From contig NIVC01000639.1 of NCBI GenBank assembly GCA_002269645.1, forward strand, positions 346,760 to 410,759: DNA of 64,000 nucleotides, written 5' to 3'. The stretch comes from Macrostomum lignano. Taxonomy: Eukaryota. The notes under the pieces are model-generated. The model did not search any database. It worked only from the letters and a program-made list of their open reading frames with translations, and was not told the origin of the DNA. The position numbers were made by a program, and so were the translations under genes. Shown here piece after piece: positions 17,821 to 62,920 of this stretch (the first letter of the stretch is position 1; every line of letters begins with the position of its first letter).

Positions 17821-18017
17821 AGCCCCAAATGAAATCCGCGCACGGAACTGAACCGTTAGGGGTCGGGCACCGAAAAACCACACTTGAAGCTTCACACAAT
17901 CCTCTGAAGTCCTGGCGGTGACAAAGAGTCACTTCAGTACAAAAATTAAAACCATTAATTTCTCGCTCGTTCGAACTCCGGCCTTCCAATGAACACTTTC
18001 TCCAACTGTCCGCACAG

Positions 18018-18517: not shown

Positions 18518-18559
18518 GTGAGTGGGCTGAAGCAGTCTCTATGTAGCCCCTACGCAGCA

Positions 18560-25160: not shown

Positions 25161-25216
25161 CGTCCCTCTCTTGTTTAGAAGTGTCAGTAGCAGACGAATT
25201 AATTGCATCCCCCCAG

Positions 25217-25912: not shown

Positions 25913-25924
25913 GTGGGCGGCAGG

Positions 25925-26033
25925 CGGATTTGGTAGAAGGCGGATTTGGTAGAGGGCGGATTTGGTAGAGGGCGGATTTCGTAGAGGGCGGATTTGGTAG
26001 AGGGCGGATTTGGTAGAGGGCGGATTTGGTAGA
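25925..26033. repeat. 16 bp unit GAGGGCGGATTTGGTA
   Basis: Fills the small intron 25913-26066. Confidence 0.9.
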
Positions 26034-42570: not shown

Positions 42571-42883
42571 AGAGAAATAATCGCGAAGAGAATAAAAGCC
42601 GTCGTTTCAAAACCGCAAGCAGTGACTCAGTTTACAGATAAAGTATTTTATCGGCAAATTGTAACTGATGGGAGTCCTCAAGCCTTCGTCAGTTAAGAAT
42701 TTATTATTGGAAGAACAAGCCAACAAAGTGAAAGCAGATTTACAGGTGCTGCAGATTTTTAGCACAGTTTACAAAGCGCAATACAAGCAAAATTAGTATG
42801 CTTCGTATGAAAATGCGAAAGACAGGAACTCCAAAACACCGATTGAGTCTGGCAAACCCGATTGATGAAGAATGAAGCTGTGA

Positions 42884-45800
42884 TCACAGCAGCATGTCGG
42901 CAAAGTACTGATCGAACTCCTCCTCTCTGAAAGCGGATTTGAAAGGCGAAGAAACTGCAGTGAGAAACCTCGGTTTCCACGGCAGAGACCAGCTAACCTG
43001 CAGGAATTCCCACCTGCCCCCCCCGAGACCAGCTAACCCGCAGGCATTCTCACCTGCCCCCCCCCCAGAGACCAGCTAAGCTGCAGGCATTCTCACCTGC
43101 CCCCCCCCCCAGAGACCAGCTAAGCTGCAGGCATTCCCACCTGCCCCCCCCCAGAGACCAGCTAAGCTGCAGGCATTCCCACCTGCCCCCCCCCCCAGAG
43201 ACCAGCTAAGCTGCAGGCATTCCCACCTGCCCCCCCCCAGAGACCAGCTAAGCTGCAGGCATTCCCACCTGCCCCCCCCCCCCAGAGACCAGCTAAGCTG
43301 CAGGCATTCCCACCTGCCCCCCCCCCAGAGACCAGCTAAGCTGCACAAAATCCACACCTGGACGCGCCCTCATCTTCCACAGCCGGAGCTGGTTGTCGCC
43401 AAATTTCGCTCGCGTCAGCCGCTACCGCGTCTCCGGGCGGCTCCGCTGCTGCCTGCTGCTGCTCTGCTGCCTGCCGGATGGCGCGGATCCCCGCCAGGAC
43501 TTCGTCCTCAGCCTCCGTATCGGCGGCTGCGTCAGCTTCGGCTTTGGCTTGCAGCGGCTGCGTTGCCGACTCGGAAAGACGCTGCCGCTTGGCCTCGCGT
43601 CTGCGGTGCCTTCGGGTTCGGCATGCGGCGGGTTAGGGTGCCGAGGTGATGATGGCGAGGTGATGATGCTGAGGTGATTACACTGAGGTGATGATGGCGA
43701 GGTGATGATGCTGAGGTGATTACACTGAGGTGATGATGCTGAGGTGATGATGCTGAGGTGATGATGCTGAGGTGATTACACTGAGGTGATGATGCTCAGG
43801 TGATTACACTGAGGTGATTACACTGAGGTGATGATGCTGAGGTGATTACACTGAGGTGATGATGCTGAGGTGATAATGCTGAGGTGATTACACTGAGGTG
43901 ATGATGCTGAGGTGATGATGCTGAGGTGATGATGCTGAGGTGATTACACTGAGGTGATGATGCTGAGGTGATTACACTGAGGTGATGATGCTGAGGTGAT
44001 TACACTGAGGTGATGATGCTGAGGTGATTACACTGAGGTGATGATGCTGAGGTGATTACACTGAGGTGATGATGCTGAGGTGATAATGCTGAGGTGATTA
44101 CACTGAGGTGATGATGCTGAGGTGATTACACTGAGGTGATGATGCTGAGGTGATGATGCTGAGGTGATTACACTGAGGTGATAATGGCGAGGTGATGATG
44201 CTGAGGTGATGATGCTGAGGTGATGATGCCGAGGCTGAGGTGATGATGCCGAGGTGATAATGGCGAGGTGATGATGCTGAGGTGATGATGCTGAGGTGAT
44301 GATGCTGAGGTGATGATGCTGAGGTGAGGATGCTGAGGTGATGATGCCGAGGCTGAGGTGATGATGCCGAGGTGATAATGGCGAGGTGATGATGCTGAGG
44401 TGATGATGCTGAGGTGATGATGCTGAGGTGAGGATGCTGAGGTGATGATGCTGAGGTGATGATTCTGAGGTGATGAGTTAATTAATTTAAGGTGATGCTA
44501 ACCAAAGGTAAAGATTTGAGCAGACTAGTTAATGACGCTAAGCAGCTGCACCTGTCAATCACTCACTTTTTCTTATAGTTGAGCCGTGCCGAGCAGTCCG
44601 GGCAGAGGCGCAGCTTCACCAGCGCATTTTTTGTTTCTCCGCCCTCGGTGTAGCGAAAGTTCACCTCCCAGCTGACCAGGCCGTCAGCCTGCGGACGGTT
44701 AAAATTAGTTCCAATGATTACAGCTAGCTTCCATGATGATGAAGAACAAAAAGGCTGGGATGGGGGGTCGATTTCACAAACCCGAAACTTCCTATCGTGG
44801 AATTCGAGTTGAGTTAACAAAAAATGACAGCAGTACACATGACCAGAGGTGAGGATGCTGAGGTGAGGATGCCCTAGTGAGGATGCTGAGGTGAGGATGC
44901 TGAGGTGAGGATGCTGAGGTGAGGATGCTGAGGTGAAGATGCTGAGGTGAGGATGCTGAGGTGAGGATGCTGAGGTGAGGATGCTGAGGTGAAGATGCTG
45001 AGGTGAGGATGCTGAGGTGAGGATATTGAGGTGAAGATGCTGGGGTGAGGATGCTGAGGTGAGGATGCTGAGGTGAAGATGCTGAGGTGAGGATGCTGAG
45101 GTGAGGATGCTGAGGTGAGGATGCTGAGGTGAGGATGCTGAGGTGAAGATGCTGAGGTGAGGATGCTGAGGTGAAGATGCTGAGGTGAGGATGCTGAGGT
45201 GAGGATACTGAGGTGAAGATGCCCTAGTGAGGATGCTGAGATGAGGATGCTGAGGTGAGGATGCCCTAGTGATGATGCTGGGAGGGTGCTAAGGTAGGGA
45301 TTCTGAGGTGGTCTTAACCACAGCTGTGAGCAGCCTCATAGCGAGGCACTCACCTGCTCGCAGCGCTTCCCGCCGCAGGCGAACTGCCCCTGCCGGACAG
45401 AACCTCAGCCTCTGTGCGCCATCGCAGGCCGACCCGGCCCTCCTTGTAGCCCCTCAGGTCGGCAATGCAGTACTCCTTGTACAGCTTGTCCCAGTAGCGC
45501 TTGGCGAGCCGCTGCTCCCAGCTACCGGCCTCTTCGGAGCCGCCGTCCCACACGAACCGGTGGTGCTCCCTGATGATGTCGATGTCTCGCTTGTCGCGCG
45601 AGGCGTCCCTTTTGAAGTCAGCGTAGCTGCCGCCGAAGTACCTGGAAATTGGATGGCGCAGATGGGGCCTTTGATCTAAGCTCCGTGCATGGACCTGTGC
45701 TCACCGGAGCCGCGCCTGCGACACCAGCCGAAACCCGAATCCCGATTGGCTTTGATTTTGAGGATAAGGGAGGGTGCTGACACCCGAGTTGAAGACAAGG

Positions 45801-46251
45801 GAGGCAAAGCTGCTGATTACTGCGAGCTTAGTCAATTAACAGTGGGCTATGCAAGTTAAGCAGAGATGGCTACGGTTAGTACGCAGCTGAATAGGCTGCT
45901 TGTTTACCAGCATGCGGACGGCTACCTGATGTAGTTGTTCACCAGCATCTTGTGCCTCGAATAGGCGTCCATCGCCAGCAGCTGCTGCCTCCGAGCGCCG
46001 GCCTCCTCTCGACAGGCACCGTCGGCGACTGCCACGCCGCCGCTCCGCCGCGGTGCACCAAAGCCGGATGTTGACGAGGCAGCAGCCGCCCTTGCCTCAT
46101 CGCGGGGACGCGAGCGCTTCCGGTTGGACACCGAAGCGAGCCGCACGGAGGCGGCGTCCTCCGAGGCCGCCTGGCTGACGGAGTCCTCGAAACCGAAGTC
46201 CGACTGCCAGTCATCGGGCCCGACGTCGTTCGCCGTTGGCAACGGCTCGGC
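42884..46251 (-). CDS. FRA10AC1: FRA10AC1 homologue (spliceosome-associated); exons 46251-45926, 45641-45354, 44688-44567, 43600-43358, 42926-42884
   Basis: All introns GT-AG with matching phases. Motifs MDAYSRHK, HHRFVW, WEQRLAKRYWDKLYKEYCIADL, GLRWRTEAEVLSGRG, SWEVNFRYTEGGETKNALVKLRLCPDCS, SEIW, EEEFDQYFADMLL*. One 1-nt frameshift in the run at 45387-45390. Confidence 0.92.
42985..43345. repeat. ~41-46 bp unit CCAGAGACCAGCTAAGCTGCAGGCATTCCCACCTG(C)n in the last FRA10AC1 intron
   Basis: Direct tandem copies with a variable C run. Confidence 0.95.
43645..44475. repeat. 14 bp units TGATGATGCTGAGG / TGATTACACTGAGG
   Basis: Intronic in FRA10AC1. Confidence 0.95.
44850..45280. repeat. 14 bp unit TGAGGATGCTGAGG
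   Basis: Intronic in FRA10AC1; related to the 43645-44475 array. Confidence 0.95.
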
Positions 46252-46264
46252 CTGCGAAGTGGGT

Positions 46265-47250
46265 TGGGGAGGGGCGGAACCTGTGGCTGAGGAGGAGCGC
46301 AACGGCTGGGGACGAGCGGAACCTGTGGCTGGGAGGGGCGGAGCCTGTGGCTGGGGCGGAACCTGTGGCTGGGGGCGGAACCTGTGGCTGGGGGCGGAAC
46401 CTGTGGCTGGGGGCGGAACCTGTGGCTGGGGGCGGAACCTGTGGCTGGGGAGGGGGGGAATGTTGACTGGGGGCGGAACCTGTGGCTGGGGGCGGAACCT
46501 GTCGCTGGGGGCGGAACCTGTGGCTGGGGAGGGGCGGAATGGTGACTGGGGGCGGAACCTGTCGCTGGGGGCGGAACCTGTGGCTGGGGAGGGGCGGAAT
46601 GGTGACTGGGGGCGGAACCTGTGGCTGGGGGCAGAACCTGGGCTGGGGGTGGAACCTGTGGCTGGGGAGGGGCGGAACGGTGACTGGGGGCGGAATGGTG
46701 GCTGGGGGCGGAACCTGTGGCTGGGGAGGGGCGGAATGGTGACTGGGGGCGGAACCTGTGGCTGGGGGCGGAACCTGTGGCTGGGGAGGGGCGGAATGGT
46801 GACTGGGGGCGGAACCTGTCGCTGGGGCGGAACCTGTGGCTGGGGGCGGAACGGTGACTGGGGGCGGAACGGTGACTCGGGGCGGAACCTGTGGCTGGGG
46901 CGGAACCTGTGGCTGGGGGCGGAACCTGTGGCTGGGGGCGGAACCTGTGGCTGGGGGCGGAACCTGTGACTGGGGGCGGAACGGTGACTCGGGCGGAACC
47001 TGTGGCTGGGGGCGGAACCTGTGGCTGGGGAGGGGCGGAACGGTGACTGGGGGCGGAACCTGTGGCTGGGGGCGAAAACTGTGGCTGGGGAGGGGCGGAA
47101 CGGTGACTGGGGGCGGAACCTGTGGCTGGGGCGGAACCTGTGGCTGGGGCGGAACCTGTGGCTGGGGTGGAACCTGTGGCTGGGGTGGAACCTGTGGCTG
47201 GGGGTGGAACCTGTGGCTGGGGTGGAACCTGTGGCTGGGGGCGGAACCTG
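46265..47250. repeat. G-rich minisatellite (~18-19 bp GGCGGAACCTGTGGCTGGG variants)
   Basis: Direct reading; lies immediately 5' of the FRA10AC1 first acceptor. Confidence 0.95.
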
Positions 47251-47544
47251 TGATTGAGGAGGGGTGGACAAGAAAAACAAGTGGCTATATTTTCATATAA
47301 AGTGCCATTACAGCAACATATAAAATGAGCAGAGCCAACAGAAATCACAAAGCCAAACATGCCAATTCGGGTCAGATTCAGACTCAGATGAGTGCAGCAG
47401 TTTTTATTATTTTTATCAACAAATACAGGCAGCAAAATGCAATCCAAATATGGTTCAAAGCACACAGAGCGGAGAGTCAGAAAAGCTACGAGCTGCTCAT
47501 TGATTGCTTCGTAGAAACCGTGCATGGGATGAAACTGACGGGCG

Positions 47545-48020
47545 AATGACTGAGTGGTGCCGGGGCGAATGACTGAGTGGTGCCGGGGCAAATGACTGAG
47601 TGGTGCCGGGGCGAATGACTGAGTGGTGCCGAGCGAATGACTGAGTGGTGCCGAGCGAATGGCTGAGTGGTGCCGAGCGAATGACTGAGTGGTGACGGGG
47701 CAAATGACTGAGTGGTGCCGAGCGAATGACTGAGTGGTGACGGGGCAAATGACTGAGTGGTGCCGAGCGAATGACTGAGTGGTGACGGGGCAAATGACTG
47801 AGTGGTGACGGGGCAAATGACTGAGTGGTGACGGGGCAAATGACTGAGTGGTGACGGGGCAAATGACTGAGTGGTGACGGGGCAAATGACTGAGTGGTGA
47901 CGGGGCAAATGACTGAGTGGTGACGGGGCAAATGACTGAGTGGTGACGGGGCAAATGACTGAGTGGTGACGGGGCAAATGACTGAGTGGTGCCGGGGCGA
48001 ATGACTGAGTGGTGCCGGGA
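47545..48020. repeat. 23 bp unit AATGACTGAGTGGTGACGGGGCA
   Basis: Direct tandem copies. Confidence 0.95.
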
Positions 48021-48178
48021 GAACTGGAGCAGAGTGCAAAAGTACAGGACTGACAGGCTAATAACAGAGCATTCCTTGGCCTCGGCTGTTCGACAATCGA
48101 AAACAAAAAGAAGCGCAATACAAATAAGTTATAAATTAAATGTTAATTTTATGATTGGATGAGCTGCTTTGCTAACTG

Positions 48179-51100
48179 TCACTGATCCGTGAGAGCAGTC
48201 CCAGTCCCAGTCCCAGTTGCTGCAGCCGATGACTCCACGGGAGGCGCATCGGCAGGCGGCTCCGACATCGTCGTCGCTGCCGCCTCCGAGGCAGTCGACA
48301 AGGCCGCCACCGATGTCGGCACTCGCCGCTTCGTCCGCAGCTGCTGCTGCAGCGAGTCGCTGTCCTCGCTGTCCGCGTCCTGGCTGAAGCAGAGCCCCGG
48401 CTGCTCCGCCTCCTCCTGAGCCGCCGCCGGCTTCTGCCGCTTCTGCTGCTGACGGCGAGCCACCGCGTGCAGCTCGTCGTCGTCCGCTAGCGCGGCGTTC
48501 TTCGCCGCTGTCGCCGAGTCCTCGTCGGAGCTGCAGGTTGTTGCAGCGGCAGCGGCGGCCACAGCGGCGGAGGTCCTGGCGCGCCGCTTCCGCAGCACTT
48601 TGCCGCGCTGGCGCTGTCGCTTCGCGTCCTGCACCGGCGACTCCGAAGCGCCACCGACCGCGGCGTCCTCGGCGTCGGCAGCGGCGGCCCCGAGTTCGAC
48701 TTCATCGTCCGCTCGCCGATCCGAGGCGGTCGAGTCCAGAGAGGACGAAATCGAGCGGCGCTGCGGCTGGCGCGACTTCCGCTTGAGACTCGCTGACGGC
48801 CCCTGCTGGGCCTGGGCGGCCTCGGCCGGCTGCTGGGGATGCCGGGGCTGCTGAAGCTGCGGCATGCCGGCCGCGTCGGACTTCTGGCGTCGCCGGGCCG
48901 TCCGCTTGGTGCGCCGGTTGCTGACGACAGCGGCGCCGCTGCCACCAGCTGGTCCAGCGGCGGGGTCGGCGTCGGCAACCGGCAGCGGGGCCTTGAAGCC
49001 CGGTGGCTGCGCCTGCGTGCTGCCCGGACCGCCGCCGCTGATGCCGCCTTCGCCTGTTGTTGAAGCCGCGGCTGCTGCGGCTGCCGCTGCGGCCGCCTTC
49101 CTCTTGCGCTTCCTCTCGCCGTCAGCGCCGCCGCCACCGGAGGCGGAGCAGATCAGCAGGTGCTCATCGGCAGCCTCGCTACTATCGAAGATTCTGCCGC
49201 AGCTGTGGCAGGTGAGCTGCGGGTGGCTGGCCCTGCGGTGCTGCAGCAGCAGGTGCTGCATGCGGAAGGACAGGGTGCACACGCCGCACTGGTAGGCGTC
49301 GCTGGCAGGGTCGTGGCAGTTCACCTTCAAATCCTTCAGACGAACCTGCGGGTCAAGGAGGGAAAAGCAGATTCAATCAACTAATACCGGTAAATCGATT
49401 AATCAACCAACTAATCAATCAATTAATACATGTAAATCAATCAGCTAATCAGTCAATCAATAAACTAATCAGTCAATCAATAAACTAATCAATCGATTAA
49501 TCAATTAACTAATCAATCGATTAATCAATTAACTAATCAACCAATCTATCTATCTATCAATCATCCAATCAATCATTAAATCAATCAATCAATCATCTAA
49601 GTAGTCGAATAATCCATCAATCAATCAACTACGAGGTGTATTCAAAAAGTTCTTTTCGGTCCTTTGGCATTTATTTTTAAAAAGCCTTGTAAACAGAATT
49701 TTAGCGATTTCACCAAGTTATGTCTATGGCCTAAACGTTCCTAGGGTTTTAAGTCTCAGTTTGCAACTATGTTAGAGCAGCGAACATTTCTATCATCTAC
49801 CACTCAATTTCTTGGCCATGGCTGAATCATTTTCAAAGCAAGACGTTCGAAGCTTGATGAAGTTTCAGTTTCTGCAAGGAAAAAAGCCACCGGATATGTT
49901 TAGGGAGCTTCAGCAAGTGCTTGGCAAATGTGCACCAACTGAGCAGACAGTTCGAAAATGGTACCGGCTGTTCGCTGAGGGAAGAGAGAGCGTTGAGGAC
50001 AATGATCGCTCTGGAAGGCCGATGACTGCAACCAACGAGACTGTTGTGAAGAAAGTGCAAGAGCTCCTGGATGATGATCGGCGACGGACTTGCGAAGAGT
50101 TGGCAGAAGACGTTGGTGTGTCAGTAGGAAGCGTCCACACCATTCTGACGGAGCGTCTTCACCTGCAGAAAAAGTTTTGCAAGTGGGTGCCACACCTGCT
50201 GACAGGTGAGCAAAAGATGCAGCGAACTGTGGCTTCAAGCAGCCACCTGCGTCGGTTCCATCGAGAAGGGGAGGATTTTCTATCAAGAATTGTAGCTGGA
50301 GACGAGACGTGGGTTTACAGCTGGGATCCTGAGACAAAGGCCCAGTCTGCCGAATGGCTTCCAGCACATTCTCCAAGACCTCAGAAGGCCATCAGGAAGC
50401 AGGGCGCGATGAAGATCATGCACGTCATGTTTTTTGATTCCCAAGGAATCCTGCTGAACTGGGCAGTCCCACAAGGAACCACCGTCAATGGGACTACTAC
50501 AAGTGGATTCTGCAGGAGAAGCTGCGCCCAGCAATACGAAAGAAGCGCCCTGATCTGCTGGAATCTGGCGTGATCCTGCTGCACGACAATGCGCCAGCAC
50601 ATCGCAAGCACAACGTCGTGGAACTCCTGAGCAAATGGGGATGGGAAGTGCTCCAACATCCAGCCTATTCGCCTGATTTGTCGCCGTGCGACTTCTTCTT
50701 ATTTCCATCTGTGAAGAAGCACCTTCGGGGCATTCGATTCGACAGCGTCGAGCACATCGAGGCTGCATGCAATCAAGCTGTTCGCCAAACGGACGCGAGT
50801 GGTGTGAGTTCCGGAATCAGAGGCCTGGTAAATCGCTGGCAGAAGTGCAAAGACATTGGCGGTGAATATGTTGAGTGACCGAATCATGTTAAGCAATCTA
50901 ACAGTGTTTTCATAGTTCCAGTTGTTTTGTGTTCAGTTTTGTAGGGTACCGAAAAGAACTTTTTGAATACACCTCGTAATAAGTTAATCAACTAATCAGT
51001 CAATCAATCAATCAATCAGTCATCTAAGTAGTCAAATAATCCATCAATCAATCAATCAAGCCCAGTACTCACAGAACACCCAAGAAACAAAGACTAATTG

Positions 51101-52351
51101 CCTCACCTTGTGTTGAGAGATCACGTGATCGGACAGGTTGCGCACCTGCTTCTGGCACACAGGGCACTCTTTAGTCACCCGGGGCGACTCGTGGATCTGC
51201 TTGATGTGGCTGACCAGGTTTTGCTTGCCCTTCAGGCTGGCCTGGCAGTGCGGGCAGGGGAAGCAGCGGCTCTCGGAGGTCTGGCCGTGCACCCGCTGCC
51301 TGTGCACCGCCAGGAGCCGCTCGCTGCTGAACACCTTCTTGCACACTTCGCAGGAAATCTCGTCCCAGACCTCGGCTGCGACCGATTTGGAGGCTGAGGC
51401 GGGGACAGCGGACGCCGGCAGCGGCTCCTTGTGCACCGCGGCCATGTGGTTGCGCAGCAGGTAGAGGCGCTTGAAGTGGTGGCCGCAGAGGCCGCACTGG
51501 TGCGATTCGACTGGGTGTACATTGTGAAGGTGGACCCGCAGCCGGTACTCCGAGTTGAACTCCTTGCCGCAGGCCTGCGGTGCGACGGTTCGGGGGTCCG
51601 TTTGGGATTATCAGGCAGCCCAGCAACTGAGGATCTGGGAGGCTGGAACAGCAACTGAGGATCTGGGAGGCTGGCCCAGCAACTGAGGATCTGGAAGGTT
51701 GGCCCAGCAACTAAGGATCTGGGAGGCTGGCCCAGCAACTGAGGATCTAGGAGGCTGGCACAGCATCTGAGGATCTGGGAGGCTGGCACAGCATCTGAGG
51801 ATCTGGGAGGCTGGCAAAGCAACTGAGGATTTGGGAGGCTGGCCCAGCAACTGAGGATCTGGGAGGCTGGCCCAGCAACTGAGGATCTAGGAGGCTGGCC
51901 CAGCAACTGAGTAAATCAAAGCAGGCAGGCGATTTAACCTCGCAGGGATGCGTGCCGGTATCAGAGAAGCCGTGCAGGTAGTGCATGTGCTGGATCAGTT
52001 TGATGTGGTGGTTGAACAGGTTGACGCCGTCGCACAGATGGCAGCGCAGCAGCTTAGTGTGTTTGGCCATGACGTGGGCTGTCAGCTCGCGCAGGATGCC
52101 GTCGCTCTCGGCTACTTTGATGCGTCGCCGTCTGCTGCCACCGCCACCGCAGTTGAAATCGTCAGCGCCACTCCGAGTGTCAGAGTCGGAGCAGAACGGG
52201 CAGCTGACGGGGTTTTGAGCAGGTTGAAAATCAGAAACTCGAAATTTACAAATCTGCAAACAGACAGAGGCAGGCAGACAGACAGGCAGATAGACAGACA
52301 GACAGACAGACAGACAGGCAGACAGGCAGATAGACAGACAGACAGACAGGC

Positions 52352-52384
<33 letters not shown>

Positions 52385-55300
52385 GGAAGGCAGGCAGATA
52401 GACAGACAGACAGACAGAGACAGACAGACAGACAGAGACAGACAGACAGGCAGACAGACAGGCAGACAGACAGGCAGATAGACAGACAGATAGACAGACA
52501 GACAGGCAGATACAGACAGGCAGACAGACAGACAGACAGACAGACAGGCAGACAGACAGACAGAGAGACAGACAGGCAGACAGGCAGGCAGGCAGGCAGG
52601 CAGACAGAAAAACACTCAGTGTCACAAACCCGGCGGCGGGCTGCACGCTGGCACAGCAGAGCACCACGAAGGCCACGCAGCGGGTCAGATCGTAGGGCAG
52701 CAGCCGCCAGCGCAGCAGGTCCGGGCAGCCGAGGCCCCGCTCGTGCAGCTGGTCGAAGTCCAGCAGGCCGGGGCGCAGCGGCTCCGGGGTTGGCGGCAGC
52801 CGCAGGTCCGGGGCGGCCCGCTTCAGCAGGGCGTGCACCCGGCGCACCCGCTTGTCGCAGAACTGTGCGTAGCCGAGCAGCAGGAACAGGTCCACCCGGC
52901 GGCCGCGCTGCCGCCGCTGCTCCGGCAAGTCCTCGTCCTCCGCCTTCTCTTCCGCGGCTGAGGTTGGCGGCTCCACAACCAGCAGCAGGCGGAGGTTCGG
53001 CCACGGCCGGGCCAGCCAGAGGCCTTCGAACTGGCGGTCGGAGGTGCTGGCCAGCAGGCCGGAGACCAGCTCGTTCAGGCGGTAGTCGGCCAGGGCCCGC
53101 TGGGAGCTGCGAAATGGAAACATATGCACATGGGGTCACTGAGCTGCTGATCAAGGAGGGCAGTCGAAAAGGTGCAAGACGATGAAATTGATGGAGTTGA
53201 TGAGCGAGGTGCAGAGATGATGAAGATCGGTGCGGATGTTCCTTGCCAGTCTGGCGAGTTGAGAGGTGGCATGGCACGGATGTTTGGGGATGGGAACCAA
53301 ATTCAGGCCACATGATTTCGTCGTGATTCCACCCATCTCCGGATGGTCAAGCGCCTGGAACTTCCTCAAGGAAGGCTCGTTATCATCGCATGGCGGCTGG
53401 CGCAGCGTTTTGCGTTACCTGCTGCAGTAGGGGGGGAGGACTCACGACTAAAAGGTCGGGGGTTCGATTCTCGACCCACTCAGAACAATTTGTGTCCTTG
53501 AGCAAGACACTTAACTCTGCATTGCTCTACTCAAGATCTGCTGTTTTACACTTGATGAGATTTGATGAGATCCGGCATTGATAGAAGACTAACCCTTACC
53601 TGAACTCCTCCACGCTCAGTGGCGCGGCCGGCTCCTCGTCACCTGAGGAGCCGCCGACTTCCTCGCCGTCGCCCTCTTCATCCTCGTCGTCGTTGTCATC
53701 TTCGTCCGCCGCGCCGCCGTGTCTGTCGCGACGTCCACCGAAGCCAAGGCCGAAGTCGAGGCCTTCAAAGCTGCCAGCAGCTCCTCCGCCAGCAGCCTCG
53801 ACGCCGCCTTCGGATTCGTTCCGCCGGCGCTGCTGCAGCCTCAGCAGCTGCTTCTCGTCATCGAATCCGTAGCTTGCCGCCGAGCGCGCAGCGGCGTCGG
53901 GATTGTCGAAGCAGTCGAAGCCGGCATCAAATTCGTCCCACTGCTCGGGAGTGGCTGAGGAGGCCTTCACGTTCAGCATGGCGAGCAGCTTGCCGAACAC
54001 CGAGGCTCCGCCGGTGCCCACGATAGCGTCGGCGTCGGAAGCGGCAGAGGCAGCGGCGGTGTCGGCAGTTTCTGCTGCTGCTGCAGCGGCGGTGTCGGCA
54101 GTTGCTGCTGCTGCAGCGCCGCAGTAGTCGGTGTCGACGAGGTCGGGCTGCTCCTTGACGAGCTGATCGACAGCCGCAGGCGAAGGTTTCGACGGCTGCT
54201 GCTCTGGCTGTAGAACTGCATCAAAGGATCAGAGAGCAGTACTGCTTGGATTGATGCGGAGAACTGGGGGGGGGGGTTGAGAAAGCAAAATGGGAATTAG
54301 GACAGACTATGAGGAATTAGAGAATACAAAAAGGGATCTGAAGAAACTACTAGGGGATTTCTGTGACTATAAATGGGGATCAGTGGCTTTAGATGGGGAT
54401 CAGTGGCTACAGATGGGGATCAGTGGCTACAGATGGGGATCAGTGGCTATAGATGGGGATCAGTGGCTATAGATCAGTGGCTATAGATGGGGATCAGTGG
54501 CTATATATGGGGATCAGTGGCTATAGATGGGGATCAGTGGCTACAGATGGGGATCAGTGGCTAAGCGGGCAAGTGAGCAGGGAGATCTCCGGCCACTCAC
54601 TCGGCTCCTCAACTGTCAGCACCTCGTGCCGCTCGGCACGGACATCGACCAGCTCCACGGGCCGGAAGCCGGGCGGCGGCCTGCCGAAGCGCATGCCCAG
54701 CAGGCGCCTGTAGGGCTGCTGCATGAGGAAGGCGCGGCCTTCAAGGAGGCCACCGGATTCGTCCATCAGGCTGTCCAGCTGCCGCATGTAGGCGTCAGAG
54801 ACTACGCAGAGGCCGCGAACGGGCCACCTGGCCTGGTCCATGGTGGCGAAGGTGGCCGGGTCATCCGCCAGGTACTTGCCCCAGGTGGTGGCGCCGCGGG
54901 GCAGCGTCATGGCCGAGCCCACCTGCGGCAGGCGGTCGCAGCCGGAGGCCGGCTCGAACAGCTCGCGGCAGAACTCGAACGAGCAGGTGAGCATGGACAG
55001 GTAGACGGAGCTCGGGTCAGACGACTCGGCAGCGGCCAGCCCGGCCAGAAGGCGGCGGTCCCTGTCCGACGGGCGCTGCCTGGCGAACCTGGCCAGGAAG
55101 CCGGGCTTCGGGCGCACCAGGCCGCGCCGATGCAGCAGCAGGCTGGTGAGGTTCAGCGGCGCCCCGGCCGAGGACGGCGCCGTTGACGGCTCGGACAGTC
55201 GGCGCCGGATGTCCGAGTCGTCCGGACAGCAGGTGAGGGAGCCGAGACTGCGCCGGATGTAGCAGTCGGGGGGCACCGGCTGCACTGCGTTGGGGCCGCG

Positions 55301-55441
55301 CTGCTGCGATGACGGCGAGCGGCGGCGGCGGCGGCGGCGAGGCTGCGGCATCTCCTGAGAGGATGAAGCGTCGCCTGCGGGGGCAGCTGCGGGCTCGGGG
55401 GGCGGCTCAGCTGGCTGCTCTTCGTCCTGGTCTGACGACAT
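48179..55441 (-). CDS. Large multi-C2H2 zinc-finger protein; exons 55441-54601, 54215-53600, 53106-52630, 52203-51939, 51574-51107, 49345-48179
   Basis: Phases chain 1,2,2,0,0 with GT-AG ends. Fingers include CHLCD...HMHYLH, CEACGKEF...HLHNVH, CGLCGHHF...HMAAVH, CEVCKKVF...HRQRVH, CPHCQ...HIKQIH, CPVCQ...HVISQH, CGVCTLSF...HRRASH, CHSCGRIF. The exon 3/4 junction is the least certain. Confidence 0.72.
49632..50976 (+). mobile_element. Mariner (Tc1/mariner, DD34D) transposon, 1345 bp, in intron 5 of the zinc-finger gene
   Basis: Perfect 29-bp TIRs CGAGGTGTATTCAAAAAGTTCTTTTCGGT (49632-49660 / 50948-50976) and a TA duplication on both sides (49630-31, 50977-78), inserted in an (ATCA)n tract. Confidence 0.97.
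49818..50878 (+). CDS. Mariner transposase, ~353 aa if one frameshift at ~50490 is corrected
   Basis: HTH N-terminus, WVPHLL, GDETW, HDNAPAH, YSPDLSPCDF. Adding one G restores VNGDYYKWILQEKLRPAIRKKRPDLLESGVILLHDN. Confidence 0.92.
51615..51910. repeat. 28 bp unit GAGGATCTGGGAGGCTGGCCCAGCAACT
   Basis: Intronic tandem copies. Confidence 0.95.
52260..52605. repeat. (GACA)n microsatellite
   Basis: Intronic. Confidence 0.95.
53435..53535 (+). mobile_element. tRNA-derived SINE fragment
   Basis: B-box GGTTCGATTC at 53461-53470 followed by TGTGTCCTTGAGCAAGACACTTAAC, a central motif typical of many metazoan SINEs. Confidence 0.6.
54365..54562. repeat. 20 bp unit GATGGGGATCAGTGGCTATA
   Basis: In intron 1 of the zinc-finger gene. 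Confidence 0.93.
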
Positions 55442-55464
55442 TGCGCTGCGGGAAGGAGGAGGCG

Positions 55465-55890
55465 GCTAATGACGATTGCAGATAGGCTAATGGTGATTCC
55501 AGATAGGCTAATGGCGATTGAAGATAGACTAATGGCTATTCTAGATAGGCTAATGGTGATTCCAGATAGGCTAATGGTGATTCCAGATAGGCTAATGGCG
55601 ATTGCAGATAGACTAATGGCTATTCTAGATAGGCTAATGGTGATTCCAGATAGGCTAATGGTGATTCCAGATAGGCTAATGGTGATTCCAGATAGGCTAA
55701 TGGTGATTCCAGATAGGCTAATGGTGATTCCAGATAGGCTAATGGTGATTTCAGATAGGCTAATGGTGATTCCAGATAGGCTAATGGTGATTCCAGATAG
55801 GCTAATGGTGATTCCAGATAGGCTAATGGTGATTCCAGATAGGCTAATGGTGATTCCAGATAGGCTAATGGCGATTGCAAATTGGCTAAT
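55465..55890. repeat. 21 bp unit GGCTAATGGTGATTCCAGATA
   Basis: Tandem copies just 5' of the zinc-finger gene acceptor. Confidence 0.95.
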
Positions 55891-56324
55891 GGCGATATTA
55901 AACGGGCTAACACAGATTTTACAAGCATATTTAGCTAATTTGACTTCTATTGAAAGCTACTGAATCTGCTAGACTGGCCATAAAAGCTGGAATTGAGCAT
56001 CCTGAATGAGTAACAAGACTAAATAGAACAAAGACAGCACGGTGGTAGGCAAGGAGCCTAATTAAGAATCCTATTTGTGTTAATAATTATATATATTTAT
56101 TTAGTATGGTTTTCACTGCGTACAATCGAATACACAGTCGTTAATAGCTAAGATGGTAAAGAATTTCCTGTTTTTCTTAAATCTACATTTTTAAGCTACT
56201 AGAAGTAGTCAGGTGGATTATTAGACACTCTTAGCCTACATAAAAGAAACTAAGCGATCTGATACGTTGGAGGGGAACAGTTGGTATCCAGCGCGGTCAT
56301 CCGCACACACTGGGAGCTGGCCAG

Positions 56325-56801
56325 TCAGCCCATCGGCCCCGTCCACTCGCCGGTGTCCCTGGCGTCTTGGCCGTATTTCTGGTGCCAGCGCTCGATGTAC
56401 TCCTTCTTGCGCTGCTCCCGCCTGGCAAAGTAGTCCGGGTACTGCGCCTTCTCCAGCGGGTGCCACAGGTCCAGAAGCGCGTCCGGGTAGTACTGCCAGC
56501 GGCCGAAGGCCACGCCGCCGGGGTCGTTGGGCCAGCGGAAGGGGAAGTAAGACTTCTTGGCCTGCAGCTCCGAGTAGGCGGACTCCAGCAGAGCCTTGGC
56601 CTTGATCGGGTCCTCAACTTCGCGGTTCTCGTCGAAGCGCTGGCGCAGCAGCACGGCGTGGTAGCGGTAGTCCAGGCGCTCGTGGTGCTTGGCCCGCACC
56701 TCGTATAGGGCGGCCTTGTACAGCCGGCACACCTTCTGCGCATGCGACAGGTAGCTGGTGCGCAGGTAGGCTGGGAGCGGCGGACCGGGGAGGGTCGGCA
56801 T
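56325..56801 (-). CDS. NDUFB9: NADH dehydrogenase (ubiquinone) 1 beta subcomplex subunit 9 (complex I B22, LYR family), single exon
   Basis: YLSHAQKVCRLYKAAL...YRYHAVLLRQRFDEN...PGGVAFGR...LDLWHPLEKAQYPDYFARREQRKKEY. Candidate poly(A) signal AATAAA at 56101-56096. Confidence 0.95.
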   Translation of the reverse strand: MPTLPGPPLPAYLRTSYLSHAQKVCRLYKAALYEVRAKHHERLDYRYHAVLLRQRFDENREVEDPIKAKALLESAYSELQAKKSYFPFRWPNDPGGVAFGRWQYYPDALLDLWHPLEKAQYPDYFARREQRKKEYIERWHQKYGQDARDTGEWTGPMG

Positions 56802-56924
56802 GGCTGCTCAGCTGAGTCTACTGCCGATTGCTCTTTCAGCTTGGATAACTGCTAGGGCTGGGATCCGAGTGCGGCAGCCGCTGCTGCTGCTGCAGGTGGA
56901 GAGATGTGGTTGATCTATCAGGTG

Positions 56925-58065
56925 TGGTATGGGGTCTATCAGATTGCAATACGGGATCTATCAGATTGAGGTATGGGATCTTCAGATTGGGGTATGGGAT
57001 CTATAAGATTGCGGTATGGGATCTTCAGATTGGGTATGGGATCTTATGATTGGGGTATGGGATCTTATGATTGGGGTATGGGATATTATGATTGGGGTAT
57101 GGGATCTTATGATTAGGGTATGGGATTTTCAGATTGGGGTATGAGATCTATCAGATTGGGGTATGGGATCTTCAGATTGTGGTATGGGATCTTCAGATTG
57201 GGGTATGGGATCTTCAGATTGAGGTATGGGATCTTCAGATTGGGGTATGGGATCTTTAGATTGGAGTATGGGATCTTCAGATTGAGGTATGGGATCTTCA
57301 GATTGGGGTATGGGATCTTCAGATTGGAGTATGGATCTTCAGATTGGGGTATGGGATCTTAAGATTGGGGTATGGGATCTTCAGATTGAGGTATGGGATC
57401 TTCAGATTGGGGTATGGGATCTTCAGATTGGAGTATGGGATCTTCAGATTGGGGTGTGGGATCTTCAGATTGGGGTATGGGGTCTTCAGATTGGGGTATG
57501 TGATCTTCAGATTGGGGTATGGGATCTTCAGATTGGGGTATGTGATCTACAGATTGGGGTATGAGATCTATCAGATTGGAGTATGGGATCTTCAGATTGG
57601 GGTGTGGGATCTTCAGATTGGGGTATGGGGTCTTCAGATTGGGGTATGGGATCTTCAGATTGAGGTATGGGATCTATCAGATTGGGGTATGGGATCTATC
57701 AGATTGAGGTATGGGATCTATCAGATTGGGGCATGGTATTTATCAGATGGGGTATGGGATCTATTAGATGGGGTATGAGATCTTCAGATTGGGGTATGGG
57801 ATCTTCAGATTGGGGTATGGGATTTTCAGATTGGGGTATGGGATCTTCAGATTGGAGTATGGGATCTTCAGATTGGGGTATGGGATCTATCAGATTGAGG
57901 TATGGGATCTATCAGATTGGGGTATGGTATTTATCAGATGGGGTATGGGATCTATTAGATGGGGTATGGGATTTATCAGATGGGGTATGGGATCTATTAG
58001 ATGGGGTATGGGATCTATTAAATGGGGTATGGGATCTTAAGATTGGGGTATGGTATCTGTCAGAT
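56925..58065. repeat. 21 bp unit GGGTATGGGATCTTCAGATTG
   Basis: Direct tandem copies. Confidence 0.95.
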
Positions 58066-58571
58066 TGGATAAAACAACTGAAGCAATTAGGTAAATAATA
58101 AAAGTGAGCTCAAGCAGTAGGACGAAGCACTGTTAGAATCGACCTATTATTAAATCTATGCATATCAGTGCTAAAATGTACGAGCTAATGTAATCAGTAG
58201 TCTGGCTGGACAAAAATTGAATAAAATTCGCATAGACGTCAGCCAGAACGCGGACAAGACTGGACAATGCCGGGATAGCGCCACAAACTGCCTATGGTAG
58301 AAAACGAGTCGCAGTATCATTATAATAAAAGACACGGGTTGGCTGTAAAGGCGAAACGCCGCAATGAAGCATGGCTGCAGTGGACTAATGGCAGCCGCAC
58401 ATGCTACTCACAGTAATATTAGCAGCATATATGCATAAAACGAGAAATAACAGCGTATAGCAGTTTAACAACAGGATACAATGTTACAGCTCGGCAGGGC
58501 GAACAGGGTAAAACTGATAATAGGTCAATATTGAAGCTCCATCAACTAAAACGTTTTGTGTGGATTCAGCA

Positions 58572-59220
58572 TTCTGGGATCTGGGAGATTTAAATCCCAA
58601 GCTGAGGATCTGGGAGATTTATATCCCAAGCTGAGGATCGGGGAGATCTATATTCCAAGCTGAGGATCTGGGAGATTTATATCCCAAGCTGAGGATCTGG
58701 GAGATTTATATCCCAAGCTGAGGATCGGGGAGATCTATATCCCAAGCTGAGGATCTGGGAGATTTATATCCCAAGTTGAGGATCTGGGAGATCTATATCC
58801 CAAGCTGAGGATCGGGGAGATCTATATTCCAAGCTGAGGATCTGGGAGATTTATATCCCAAGCTGAGGATCTGGGAGATTTATATCCCAAGCTGAGGATC
58901 TGGGAGATTTATATCCCAAGTTGAGGATCTGGGAGATCTATATCCCAAGCTGAGGATCGGGGAGATCTATATTCCAAGCTGAGGATCTGGGAGATTTATA
59001 TCCCAAGCTGAGGATCTGGGAGATTTATATCCCAAGCTGAGGATCTGGGAGATCTATATCCCAAGCTGAGGATCTGGGAGATCTATATCCCAAGCTGAGG
59101 ATCGGAGAGATCTATATCCCAAGCTGAGGATCTGGGAGATCTATATCCCAAGCTGAGGATGCGGAAGATCGATATCCCAAGCTGAGGATGGGGAAGATCT
59201 ATATCCTAAGCTGAGGATCC
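58572..59220. repeat. 29 bp unit CCAAGCTGAGGATCTGGGAGATTTATATC
   Basis: Direct tandem copies. Confidence 0.95.
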
Positions 59221-59290
59221 AAAAAATAATATTTCCAAATGGGATCTCGGATATCTGGTGTCGCCACATCACATTTCTGTTCGACTCAGA

Positions 59291-61057
59291 TCAGCCGTCG
59301 TCGGGCCTCTCCCCGCCGGCCGAGGCCTCGCCGTCCTCGTCCTCATCGGACTGCATCCTGGCCCTGAGCACGGCCTCGAACTCGTTGTAGTGCATCTTCC
59401 GCTTCAGCCGGAACTGCCGCCGGCGCTCTCGCTCAGCGGCGTCCAGCAGCTCGTCCTCGGCGTCCAGGTCGTGCAGGTCGGCCGGGCCGCCGAAGCCGCG
59501 TCGATTCGGCGAGGCAGACTCGCCGCCGCCAGCAGCAGCCACGGCACCGGCATCGCCGTCCTCAGCAGCCGCGGCCTCCTCGAGACGCTCCATCAAAGCG
59601 TCTGGCGACACGGCGTCGGTGAAGCTGGTCCGGCGCTGCTGCGGCTGCTTCGCCGGCTGCTCGGAGGCCGCCGGGCAGCTCCTCGAGTCGGCGTCGCCTT
59701 CGTCGCCGCTGGCAGTCGAAGCCGCGTCGCTGGACAGCGCCGGCTCGTAAGGGGTCGGCGCTTCGTCCACCTGCCGGGGCGGTGATGCACAGATTCATCT
59801 AGATCCCAGATTTACCTAGATCCCATACAGATTCACCTAGATCCCATACAGATTCACCTAGATCCCATACAGATTCACCTAGATCCCATACAGATTCATT
59901 TAGATCCCATACAGATTCACCTAGATCCCATACAGATTCACCAAGATCCCATACAGATTCATCTAGATCCCATACTGATTCACCTAGATCCCATACTGAT
60001 TCACCTAGATCCCATACAGATTCACCTAGATCCCATACTGATTCACCTAGATCCCATACTGTTTCACCTAGATCCCATACTGATTCATCTAGATCTCATA
60101 CAGATTCACCTAGATCCCATACAGATTCACCTAGATCCCATACTGATTCACCTAGATCCCATACAGATTCACCTAGATCCCATACAGATTCACCTAGATC
60201 CCATACAGATTCACCTAGATCCCATACTGATTCATCTAGATCCCATACAGATTCACCTAGATCCCATACAGATTCACCTAGATCCCATACAGATTCACCT
60301 AGATCCCATACTGATTTACCTAGATCCCATACTGATTCATCTAGATCTCATACAGATTCACCTGGATCCCATACAGATTCACCTAGATCCCATACAGATT
60401 CATCTAGATCCCATACTGATTCATCTAGATCCCATACAGATTCACCAAGATCCCATACAGATTCACCTAGATCCCATACAGATTCACCAAGATCCCATAC
60501 AGATTCACCTAGATCCCATACAGATTCACCAAGATCCCATACAGATTCATCTAGTTCCTATAGACCCTCTCAGATCATAATACAGATTCCACCGATTCCC
60601 ATACCCTCTCCCAAATCCCGTAAGAATCCCTCAGATCCGATACAGATTTCCCGGATCCTATAGATTTCCCAGAATCTTAGAACTTCTCAGGCCCTAAAGA
60701 TTGCTCAGATCCCAGACTACACTGATCTTATAGATTCCCCAGATCCCAGTCTACCTTTATCTTATAGACTGCTCAGACCCTATGGAATCTTGTGAATTCC
60801 CAGGCACTACACACGTGACATAAGCCGACGCTCACCTTCATGTGCCCATAGTCCTTATCCGCAGGATGGTAAGTCTTCAAGATGTTCATTTCGTCCCACT
60901 GGAACTCTTTCCTGGCGTCGGTATCATCAGAGTTGCCGATAGCGGCAGCGGAACTGGCAACTTCCTGACTGTCCTCGTGCTCATCAGTGCTGATGGATTT
61001 GCACTTGAGGATGCCCTTCTTTGGCCGGGCATTCAGCGGCGGCGGGCTGTTTGACAT
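59291..61057 (-). CDS. PPP1R2: Protein phosphatase 1 inhibitor-2; exons 61057-60836 and 59770-59291
   Basis: KKGILK (SILK-type), FQWDEMNILKTYHPADKDYGHMK|VDEAPTPY (GSK3 TP site), FRLKRKMHYNE. Phase-0 GT-AG intron. Confidence 0.95.
59790..60560. repeat. 21 bp unit TTCACCTAGATCCCATACAGA in the PPP1R2 intron
   Basis: Direct tandem copies. Confidence 0.95.
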
Positions 61058-62784
61058 CTGACTGATTGACAATGACAGGGGAATGACAGCTGGAATGCCA
61101 GTCAGCAGGGTGACACTGCAGCAATTAGTAAGGAGGATGAAATCAACATCAACTCGCGTAGAGGTAAAGACAAGTGTGGGTTTACACTGTTACTCGTATA
61201 TAATTTCATAATGCTTCACTACCATGAAAACCTGTTTATATACTAAGAATATGATTAATATGCTGTGCTTAATTTCTAATTTTACTTTTAACCTAACCAA
61301 ATTAATCAATCACGAAATGCATGTTTATGCTAGCGATGTGATATTAAAGAGCAAGATTGAGAATAAGAGTGAAATTGTATTGAAATTATCACAATATAAT
61401 CCAAAAGTACAATGTCAGCTCAAATAAGCTATTATACATTGTTGATGCACTAAAATCGTAGTTTGCTTTTTGGTGCCCTAGAGTGATTTTTGCCTTTATG
61501 CCTAACTTTTGATATGCAAGTAAAATATTAATACTTTATTTAAATACAAAACTGATAGGTCTATATTATTTTATTAAACATGTCTATTAGAAATAGCAAT
61601 TTTTTTAATTCCAAACTTTCCACCAAATGTTAAAATTGTAGACCCCAAAATCTTATAAGGCCAAGAAAATGACTGACATTAAATTGGGCAAGATCAAACC
61701 AAAAATAAACAAAAAACCAAGAGTAGGCTAAGGTTGATACTTAACAACTAAGATTATTATAATTTATACTTAAAAATAACCATAGATGCCATGGTTTTCA
61801 AATATTAAAGTCACTAAAATATTAGTACTATGTTAATTACAATTGGCTTGTTTAAAATGTTTGCTAGAAAATTATAAAATTGAAAATCTATATGATAGCT
61901 AAGTAGCATTACATTAGCCTAGCTAAAGATGGGAAGAAACTGAAATTTTTAACCAATTTAATTTGATTTAAATATCTGACAATCAATTCAAATATCAGAT
62001 AATACTAAATATGGTTATATCAGTGAATAATATCTCTTTGGTAGCCTTTAACCAATAGGCCATCATCTTTACTTCTTGTTCAATTAAAATGCATTTACCC
62101 CTCTAAGTTTGTGGGAATTAGCACCTCCACAAATCCATGCTCAACTCGATTCCTAATCTTTCACTTTTCCTTAAAGCTTCAAATCTAAGTACAATTTACA
62201 TGCAACTGCTTTTAAATCACCTCTGCCTTTCCTTAAGACATGCCATGTATTATCATTTCCTTAATTTTCTCTCCATATTTATGAGCCACAAGCTGTCCAA
62301 AACCCCTAGCACTTCACTTTGGTCTTTGACTCTTCAAACTCAAACTTCTCAGCCCTCTACTCTTTCTAAAGCCTTCATAAATCTTAACACAAAATGATTT
62401 ATTGTTATATCTCTAATCTTTTTGCCTTTCCTCAGATCACAACTATCCCTAATTCTTTTCCTTCATTTATAAGCCACAACATCAATACTTTACTCTTAAT
62501 TTGTTTCAAATAATCTTTCCACATCAAAGCAATTATTTGGTATTTCTTGTAGATTGTCAACTTTTTCATTCCAATTTGAACCAAATATTCTAAATATTCA
62601 TCCCATCTCTAAACCTAGCATAGGCCTAACTTTTTTATGGATAAAACAATATCTAAAATACTATAGTTGTTTTTTATTTATAGATTATAAAAACCATATA
62701 ACACTTTTAGAAAGAAGAGAAAGAGAAGAAAAGAAAAAAAGGCAAAAAATCATATACAAAGTGAAAATTAAGTTGCAATTGGGA

Positions 62785-62920
62785 GAACTAAGTTGCAATC
62801 AAGAGGAACTAAGTCATAATCAGGAGGAACTATATCACAATTTGGAGGAACTAAGTCACAATCAGGAGGAACTAAGTCACAATTTGGAGGAACTAAGTTG
62901 CAAATCTGAACAAAACTAAG
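62785..62920. repeat. 21 bp unit GAGGAACTAAGTCACAATCAG, ~6 copies
   Basis: Direct reading within the AT-rich end. Confidence 0.8.

What the first reader, a model, noticed from the sequence alone, without database searches (positions are those of the whole stretch)
42884..61060. Candidate spliced-leader trans-spliced operon: PPP1R2 - NDUFB9 - zinc-finger gene - FRA10AC1
Seen: four unrelated genes lie head-to-tail on the minus strand. Spacers are 0.9-2.5 kb and shrink to hundreds of bases once minisatellites are subtracted. Each gene begins at an acceptor-like AG: TCAGTCAG|ATG (PPP1R2, 61058), CATCTCTCCACCTGCAG 88 nt before the NDUFB9 ATG (56890), CCTCCTCCTTCCCGCAG|CGCAATG (zinc finger, 55446) and CCCACTTCGCAG|GCC (FRA10AC1, 46252). 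No upstream exon is evident in the spacers. Established: flatworms use SL trans-splicing, and SL trans-splicing resolves polycistronic transcripts in several animal groups. Inference: one promoter near the AT-rich region right of 61100 drives a polycistron.
Basis: partly seen in the sequence, partly recalled or inferred. Interest (0 to 1): 0.7.

Follow-up and report, generated by a model that had tools for sequence, protein, structure and literature searches.

The report
Annotated flatworm trans-spliced four-gene operon
Four unrelated genes of the flatworm Macrostomum lignano sit head to tail and are very probably made as one long RNA that is cut into single messages by adding a common leader, a well-described habit of this animal that its public genome annotation already implies for this locus.

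Summary
The window is Macrostomum lignano assembly Mlig_3_7, contig NIVC01000639.1. The four minus-strand genes are real: PPP1R2/IPP-2, NDUFB9, a C2H2 zinc-finger gene and FRA10AC1.

GenBank coding regions, built from leader-read-defined 5' ends, are 5'-partial. PPP1R2 begins at a different AG (61090). The NDUFB9 acceptor (56890) is plausible but unverified.

Gene names in two paralogous copies share transcriptional-unit prefixes: Mlig025187 g1 PPP1R2 and g3 ZNF, and Mlig005215 g2 ZNF and g3 FRA10AC1. The genome authors therefore assembled precursor RNAs that together bridge all four genes.

Spacers are 0.7-2.4 kb. Without minisatellites they are a constant 430-660 nt, and 130-216 nt from the poly(A) signals. 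This meets the published operon criterion.

FRA10AC1 has no genomic start codon for its conserved N-terminus and must use the leader's terminal AUG.

Two corrections: a paralog annotates a PPP1R2 5' exon at 63553-63507, so the promoter probably lies beyond 63.5 kb. The AT-rich block is then intron or outron.

The operon reading is supported, but the phenomenon is published and effectively annotated here, so interest is low.

The parts
63507..63553 (-). Upstream PPP1R2 exon (ATG...CCAAG|gtaagc). It is annotated in the paralog on NIVC01000386.1 and conserved in the window. It marks a likely capped transcription start beyond 63.55 kb.
   Evidence: PAA84187.1 (250 aa) was reconstructed exactly from L006; conserved in all 3 copies.
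61090..63506 (-). AT-rich intron/outron upstream of the PPP1R2 body.
61090..61091 (-). AG of the PPP1R2 trans-splice acceptor (ATTCCAG|CTG). The annotated transcript starts at 61089.
   Evidence: PAA79374.1 is 'partial', its coding region starts at 61087, and there is no in-frame stop upstream.
61062..61063 (-). AG of the cis-splice acceptor used by the upstream exon (AATCAG|TCAGATG).
59291..61057 (-). PPP1R2 (protein phosphatase inhibitor 2) coding region: exons 61057-60836 and 59770-59291. The intron holds a 21-mer minisatellite.
56892..59290 (-). Spacer 1 (PPP1R2 3'UTR plus intercistronic region). It holds 29-mer and 21-mer minisatellites (58577-59219, 56926-58068) and a candidate poly(A) signal AATAAT at 58151.
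56890..56891 (-). Candidate NDUFB9 trans-splice acceptor AG (CTGCAG followed by a CAG run). Unverified.
   Evidence: In one search the first CAG is lost in paralog L006, but the following CAGs are kept.
56325..56801 (-). NDUFB9 coding region (single exon, 158 aa), identical in all three paralogous copies.
55448..56324 (-). Spacer 2: NDUFB9 3'UTR with AATAAA at 56101, then a 21-mer minisatellite at 55464-55896.
55446..55447 (-). Zinc-finger gene trans-splice acceptor AG (CCCGCAG|CGCAATG). The transcript starts at 55445.
   Evidence: PAA79372.1 is partial and starts AMSSDQ.
55427..55428 (-). Alternative zinc-finger acceptor AG (GACCAG|GAC) used in the copy on NIVC01002818.1. Here the leader's AUG is in frame.
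   Evidence: PAA55040.1 starts DEEQPAEPP.
48179..55441 (-). C2H2 zinc-finger gene coding region: exons 55441-54601, 54215-53600, 53106-52630, 52203-51939, 51574-51107, 49345-48179.
46254..48178 (-). Spacer 3: zinc-finger 3'UTR with a 23-mer minisatellite (47536-48019), AATAAA at 47408, then a 19-mer minisatellite at 46316-47252.
46252..46253 (-). FRA10AC1 trans-splice acceptor AG (CTTCGCAG|GCCGAG). The ORF is open from the first exon base, with no genomic ATG for 93 codons.
42884..46251 (-). FRA10AC1 coding region: exons 46251-45926, 45641-45354, 44688-44567, 43609-43358, 42926-42884. The window copy has a 1-nt shorter G run at 45387-45390, which shifts the frame.
42700..42705 (-). AATAAA poly(A) signal of FRA10AC1, the likely 3' end of the gene cluster.
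   Evidence: One search shows no further annotated gene for about 10 kb.

Best explanation
This is a four-gene spliced-leader operon of Macrostomum lignano. Transcription most likely starts upstream of the PPP1R2 5' exon (beyond 63.55 kb) and runs through PPP1R2, NDUFB9, the zinc-finger gene and FRA10AC1.

Each downstream message is released by cleavage and polyadenylation after an AATAAA-type signal. The 35-nt spliced leader (…TTGCATG) is then trans-spliced to an acceptor AG 0.3-1.3 kb further on.

The spacers look long only because minisatellites have expanded in them. Their unique sequence is constant between genome copies.

For FRA10AC1, and for one zinc-finger isoform, the leader's terminal AUG is the start codon.

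Shown or reported by others: gene identities, 5'-partial coding regions starting at AGs, shared transcriptional-unit names, and spacer anatomy.

Inferred: a single promoter, the NDUFB9 acceptor, and the poly(A) sites.
For: 1. Source. The window is 100% identical to NIVC01000639.1 of Mlig_3_7.

2. How 5' ends were set. In that annotation, 5' ends of trans-spliced mRNAs came from leader-containing reads, and multi-gene 'transcriptional units' were cut into genes (PMC5730564).

3. Coding regions starting at AGs. PPP1R2 is PAA79374.1 (partial, starts 61087). ZNF is PAA79372.1 (partial, starts 55444). FRA10AC1 is PAA79370.1, PAA55039.1 and PAA84184.1 (all partial, all start AEPLPT at the base after the AG).

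4. Shared unit names.
- On NIVC01000386.1, PPP1R2 is Mlig025187g1 and ZNF is Mlig025187g3.
- On NIVC01002818.1, ZNF is Mlig005215g2 and FRA10AC1 is Mlig005215g3.
- Suppl. Fig. 5a of PMC5730564 states that genes cut from one unit share the prefix.

5. Published operon criterion. PMC8629364 requires same strand, a leader-spliced downstream gene, and a repeat-adjusted distance under 1 kb, with a mode near 100 bp. This locus gives 130-216 nt from the poly(A) signals.

6. Spacer variation. Total spacer length varies up to 2.6-fold between the three copies, while the unique part stays at 430-660 nt.

7. FRA10AC1 N-terminus.
- There are 93 codons with no in-frame ATG. They are 62% identical to a related species' transcript, whose ORF also opens right at an AG, and differences are in excess at third codon positions.
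- Homology to other animals starts 19 residues before the first Met.
- The leader ends in ATG.

8. Isolation. The cluster is isolated from other annotated genes.
Against: - I saw no reads. Leader sites and precursor units are inferred from coding-region starts and gene names.
- In the window copy itself, the names imply three separate units: PPP1R2 as Mlig015312g1, ZNF as Mlig025187g5 and FRA10AC1 as Mlig005215g5. No unit bridges the 2.4-kb and 1.9-kb spacers there.
- The NDUFB9 5' end is not documented, and its names are hidden by the tool. Its g-numbers are assigned by elimination.
- Genome-guided assemblers can fuse neighbouring same-strand genes through read-through.
- Sixty per cent of leader-spliced genes in this species are not in operons.
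- PPP1R2 has a cis-spliced capped-type isoform in a paralog.
- Gene order is not conserved at the NDUFB9 loci of two parasitic flatworms.
Confidence: 0.8

Rival explanations
1. The four genes are independently transcribed, each with its own promoter in the 0.7-2.4 kb spacer and its own outron. Each is leader trans-spliced as a monocistronic gene. The multi-gene transcriptional units would then be assembly fusions caused by 3' read-through.
For: - Most leader-spliced genes in M. lignano (about 60%) are not in operons.
- Regions of 2 kb or less upstream suffice as promoters in this species.
- In the window copy the annotated units appear split at the two longest spacers.
- The spacers are long by operon standards.
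Against: - Unique spacer sequence downstream of the poly(A) signals is only 130-216 nt. The rest is hypervariable minisatellite.
- Precursor units bridge PPP1R2 to ZNF and ZNF to FRA10AC1 in the paralogs.
- The splits occur only at the two longest spacers, 2.4 and 1.9 kb, each about 75% tandem repeat. The literature predicts splits in repeat-rich intergenic regions for technical reasons.
Confidence: 0.13
2. The locus is a shorter or mixed arrangement. PPP1R2 would be a conventional gene with its own capped, cis-spliced 5' exon, and only NDUFB9-ZNF-FRA10AC1 (or NDUFB9-ZNF) would form the operon.
For: - PPP1R2 has an annotated ATG-bearing upstream exon that is cis-spliced in a paralog.
- Spacer 1 is the longest and lacks a canonical AATAAA.
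- 18% of published operons start with a gene that is not trans-spliced.
Against: - A capped first gene is fully compatible with a four-gene operon.
- Mlig025187 g1 (PPP1R2) and g3 (ZNF) share one unit on NIVC01000386.1.
Confidence: 0.07

Closest known systems
Macrostomum lignano spliced-leader operons / multi-gene transcriptional units (Wudarski et al. 2017, PMC5730564; Ustyantsev & Berezikov 2021, PMC8629364)
   Same: Same species and same 35-nt leader. Genes lie on one strand and the downstream genes start at leader acceptors. Spacers are inflated by repeats and collapse to about 100-200 nt of unique sequence. Gene names already place neighbours in shared transcriptional units. The genes are conserved housekeeping types, as reported for trans-spliced genes.
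   Different: Nothing in kind. Four genes is above the usual size (75% of operons have two genes, 18% three). I found no paper that names this operon.
Caenorhabditis elegans operons (SL2-type)
   Same: A polycistronic precursor is resolved by 3' end formation coupled to leader trans-splicing. The cluster holds unrelated housekeeping genes, and unique intercistronic sequence is on the order of 100 nt.
   Different: The papers read here describe a single 35-nt leader in M. lignano and no specialised downstream leader. Raw spacers here reach 0.7-2.4 kb because of minisatellites. The leader here carries a usable AUG.
Flatworm leader 3'-terminal AUG used as initiator (Cheng et al. 2006, cited in PMC9851317)
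   Same: FRA10AC1, and one zinc-finger isoform, have an ORF in frame with the leader's AUG. FRA10AC1 has no genomic start codon for its conserved N-terminal residues.
   Different: That work was in Schistosoma mansoni. Here the case is inferred from sequence and conservation in two Macrostomum species, not from translation data.

Membership tests
M. lignano SL operon (criteria of PMC8629364) | Immediately adjacent genes, same orientation, not interrupted by an opposite-strand gene | tested here: met
   The only opposite-strand ORF is a degenerate mariner transposase inside a zinc-finger intron. It is a transposon absent from a sister copy.
M. lignano SL operon (criteria of PMC8629364) | Downstream gene is leader trans-spliced (leader reads at the start of its first exon) | tested here: inconclusive
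   Met indirectly for ZNF and FRA10AC1. Their 5'-partial GenBank coding regions start at the AG, in an annotation whose 5' ends come from leader reads. For NDUFB9 there is only a motif match at 56890. No reads could be inspected.
M. lignano SL operon (criteria of PMC8629364) | Repeat-adjusted intergenic distance below 1 kb | tested here: met
   Non-repeat sequence from stop to acceptor is 432-660 nt, and 130-216 nt from the poly(A) signals, in all copies.
Operon in the strict sense | One precursor RNA covers the genes | tested here: inconclusive
   Shared transcriptional-unit prefixes appear in two paralogs: Mlig025187 g1/g3 and Mlig005215 g2/g3. This is not shown for the window copy across spacers 1 and 3, and rests on names only.
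Operon in the strict sense | A single promoter, with no internal capped starts | not testable with these tools
   It needs RAMPAGE/CAGE data. Only a candidate 5' exon at 63553-63507 was found.
Leader-donated start codon (slORF) | The leader ends in AUG. The acceptor is in frame with the ORF, and there is no genomic in-frame ATG before conserved residues. | tested here: met
   The leader sequence ends in ATG. FRA10AC1 has 93 codons with no ATG, conserved in L007 and partly in other animals.
Leader-donated start codon (slORF) | Translation actually starts at the leader's AUG | not testable with these tools
   It needs ribosome profiling or N-terminal proteomics.
C. elegans-type SL2 operon | A specialised second leader for downstream genes and a raw spacer of about 100 nt | not tested
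   The literature read here describes one 35-nt leader sequence in M. lignano. Raw spacers here are 0.7-2.4 kb.

The most novel reading that the evidence does not exclude
FRA10AC1 may depend obligately on the spliced leader for its start codon, and this dependence may be conserved between Macrostomum species. That would lock the gene into trans-splicing, and so into a downstream operon position. Meanwhile the intercistronic regions tolerate kilobase-scale minisatellite expansions that differ 2.6-fold between genome copies. A bolder, much less likely version (a few per cent) holds that the minisatellites abutting each acceptor, 18-64 nt upstream, act in 3' end formation or leader recruitment.
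Probability: 0.35. Interest if true: 0.3.

Novelty: already known. Interest (0 to 1): 0.12.

Why it matters
It matters little beyond housekeeping. The result shows that a reader working from raw sequence alone can recognise a trans-spliced operon and place two of four acceptors to the base.

Leader trans-splicing, multi-gene precursor units and repeat-inflated operon spacers in M. lignano were published in 2017 and 2021. The deposited annotation already groups these genes into shared units.

The locus could serve as a compact test case, since transgenesis exists in this species. It could be used to ask how long minisatellite spacers are tolerated in an operon, and whether the leader's AUG is used as a start codon.

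Tried and rejected
- Leader RNA gene in the window: none found, even allowing up to 3 mismatches.
- Rfam families and tRNA genes in the window: none.
- M. lignano transcript contigs carrying the leader: none are in the collections. NDUFB9 is found only on the three genome contigs, and the exact ATG-start PPP1R2 and 'M+FRA10AC1' sequences are absent.
- A close-relative NDUFB9 transcript to fix its 5' end: none closer than 58% identity.
- Synteny at the NDUFB9 loci of Calicophoron and Hymenolepis: no IPP-2, zinc-finger or Fra10Ac1 neighbours.
- Supplementary tables of Grudniewska 2018: no entry for these genes.
- My first zinc-finger exon 3/4 junction was wrong by 18 codons against the RNA-based model. 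I corrected it.
- The bacterial promoter/terminator scan was not used because it does not apply to an animal genome.
Full report
**Where the window comes from.** The NDUFB9 protein encoded at 56801-56325 (minus strand) occurs on three contigs of GCA_002269645.1, the Macrostomum lignano Mlig_3_7 assembly. The locus from NIVC01000639.1 is 100% identical to the window, so record coordinate = window + 346,759. NIVC01002818.1 is about 99.5% identical and NIVC01000386.1 about 95%. All three carry the same gene order. This fits the duplicated, hidden-polyploid genome described for this line (PMC8629364).

**The genes.**
- PPP1R2 has exons 61057-60836 and 59770-59291.
- NDUFB9 is a single exon, 56801-56325.
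- The C2H2 zinc-finger gene has six exons, 55441-48179.
- FRA10AC1 has five exons, 46251-42884. I corrected these models against GenBank proteins.
- Pfam confirms IPP-2, Complex1_LYR, zf-C2H2/zf-Di19 and Fra10Ac1.
- Tandem repeats cover 42% of the window and fill introns and spacers alike.

**5' ends.** The genome authors set the 5' ends of trans-spliced mRNAs from reads carrying the leader. They also cut multi-gene 'transcriptional units' into genes at leader and poly(A) signals (PMC5730564). The GenBank coding regions reflect this.

- PPP1R2 on the window contig (PAA79374.1, 'partial') starts at 61087. No in-frame stop lies upstream, so its transcript starts at 61089, right after ATTCCAG.
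- The zinc-finger coding region (PAA79372.1, partial, AMSSDQ…) starts at 55444.
- The sister copy of the zinc-finger gene starts 19 nt downstream, after GACCAG, where the leader's AUG is in frame.
- FRA10AC1 is 'partial' in all three copies and starts AEPLPT… at the base after CTTCGCAG.
A paralog instead splices an upstream ATG-bearing exon, equivalent to window 63553-63507, to the acceptor at 61062. I rebuilt that 250-aa protein exactly.
- NDUFB9 starts at a true ATG with stops upstream, so its coding region says nothing about its 5' end. In the 95% paralog the first CAG of the run is lost but the following ones remain.

**Precursor RNAs.** Supplementary Fig. [quoted passage not shown] Prefixes were given to clusters of units at least 95% identical.

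The GenBank names are as follows:

| Contig | PPP1R2 | ZNF | FRA10AC1 |
|---|---|---|---|
| NIVC01000386.1 | Mlig025187g1 | Mlig025187g3 | Mlig005215g4 |
| NIVC01002818.1 | not called | Mlig005215g2 | Mlig005215g3 |
| NIVC01000639.1 (window) | Mlig015312g1 | Mlig025187g5 | Mlig005215g5 |

Unrelated genes can share a prefix only if some assembled unit spans them. Assembled units therefore link PPP1R2 to ZNF, and ZNF to FRA10AC1. By elimination, the hidden names Mlig025187g2 and g4 and Mlig005215g1 belong to NDUFB9; this step is inference.

The links are missing only across the two longest spacers of the window copy (2.4 and 1.9 kb, each about 75% tandem repeat). PMC8629364 says units tend to split in repeat-rich intergenic regions.

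**Spacers.** Lengths in nt (the counts for the window differ slightly):

| Spacer (stop to acceptor) | Window | NIVC01002818.1 | NIVC01000386.1 | Non-repeat part |
|---|---|---|---|---|
| PPP1R2 to NDUFB9 | 2424 | 2424 | 1279 | 638-660 |
| NDUFB9 to ZNF | 879 | 690 | 1446 | 432-446 |
| ZNF to FRA10AC1 | 1927 | 746 | not covered | 448-475 |

- Measured from the AATAAA signals (56101, 47408) or AATAAT (58151), 130-216 non-repeat nt remain.
- The published rule is a repeat-adjusted distance under 1 kb, with a mode near 100 bp. This locus meets it.

**The leader's AUG as start codon.** The leader is CGGTCTCTTACTGCGAAGACTCAATTTATTGCATG.

- From its acceptor, FRA10AC1 has 93 codons in frame with no ATG.
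- A spliced transcript contig of a related species (Logan SRR28338165, 76% identity) has a 90-codon counterpart that also opens right at an AG.
- The two are 62% identical, and differences are concentrated at third codon positions (47, against 27 and 22 at the first two).
- Homology to other animals begins 19 residues before the first Met, which is Leu in the closest more distant homolog I compared (P0003).
- Use of the flatworm leader's AUG as initiator is known (Cheng 2006, cited in PMC9851317).

**Limits.**
- No reads, capped-end data or long RNAs could be inspected.
- A single promoter is inferred.
- The rival of independent promoters plus read-through remains possible, at about 0.13.
- Gene order is not conserved at the NDUFB9 loci of two parasitic flatworms.

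**Verdict.** However, 30% of M. lignano genes are leader-spliced and 15% sit in operons with repeat-inflated spacers. The deposited annotation already implies shared units for these very genes. The finding is therefore correct but ordinary.

Noticed in passing
window 45387-45390 (minus strand, FRA10AC1 exon 2): The window copy has GGGG where the sister copy has GGGGG. This shifts the frame, and GenBank annotates a truncated 213-aa protein (PAA79370.1) against 343 aa in the two other copies. It is either a homopolymer assembly error or a decaying duplicate.
   Followed up: partly
window 49632-50976: A 1345-bp mariner-like element sits in zinc-finger intron 5 on the opposite strand. It has 29-bp perfect terminal inverted repeats, a TA target duplication and a degenerate transposase ORF (HTH_48, partial DDE). 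The 99.5%-identical sister copy shows the empty site, so the insertion is recent.
   Followed up: yes
window 55427-55447: Two trans-splice acceptors 19 nt apart are used in different genome copies of the zinc-finger gene. One leaves the leader's AUG out of frame, giving a short upstream ORF. The other puts it in frame and removes the genomic ATG.
   Followed up: partly
L007 1-57 (Logan SRR28338165 contig): A related species' FRA10AC1 transcript has its internal introns removed but still carries 57 nt of non-leader sequence upstream of the acceptor. It looks like a cis-spliced RNA that has not yet been trans-spliced.
   Followed up: partly
window about 53440-53485 (zinc-finger intron 2): A stretch resembles the 3' half of a tRNA (T-arm-like GGTTCGATTCTCGACCC on the + strand). 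ARAGORN and Rfam call nothing there. It may be a tRNA-derived SINE fragment.
   Followed up: partly
window 17993-18568 and 25203-25949, + strand: Open frames with cadherin (E=1.4e-31) and EGF domains point to a large FAT/CELSR-like adhesion gene on the opposite strand, convergent with the cluster.
   Followed up: partly
whole window: Tandem repeats cover 42% of the window, against 13% reported for the whole genome. Minisatellite copy number differs up to several-fold between the three genome copies of this locus.
   Followed up: partly
L005 480-900 and 2280-2760 (just beyond the window's right end, equivalent to about 64.0-66.3 kb): Repeated blocks of about 130 nt appear in direct and inverted orientation in the AT-rich region upstream of the PPP1R2 5' exon. 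They may be a foldback-type element.
   Followed up: no
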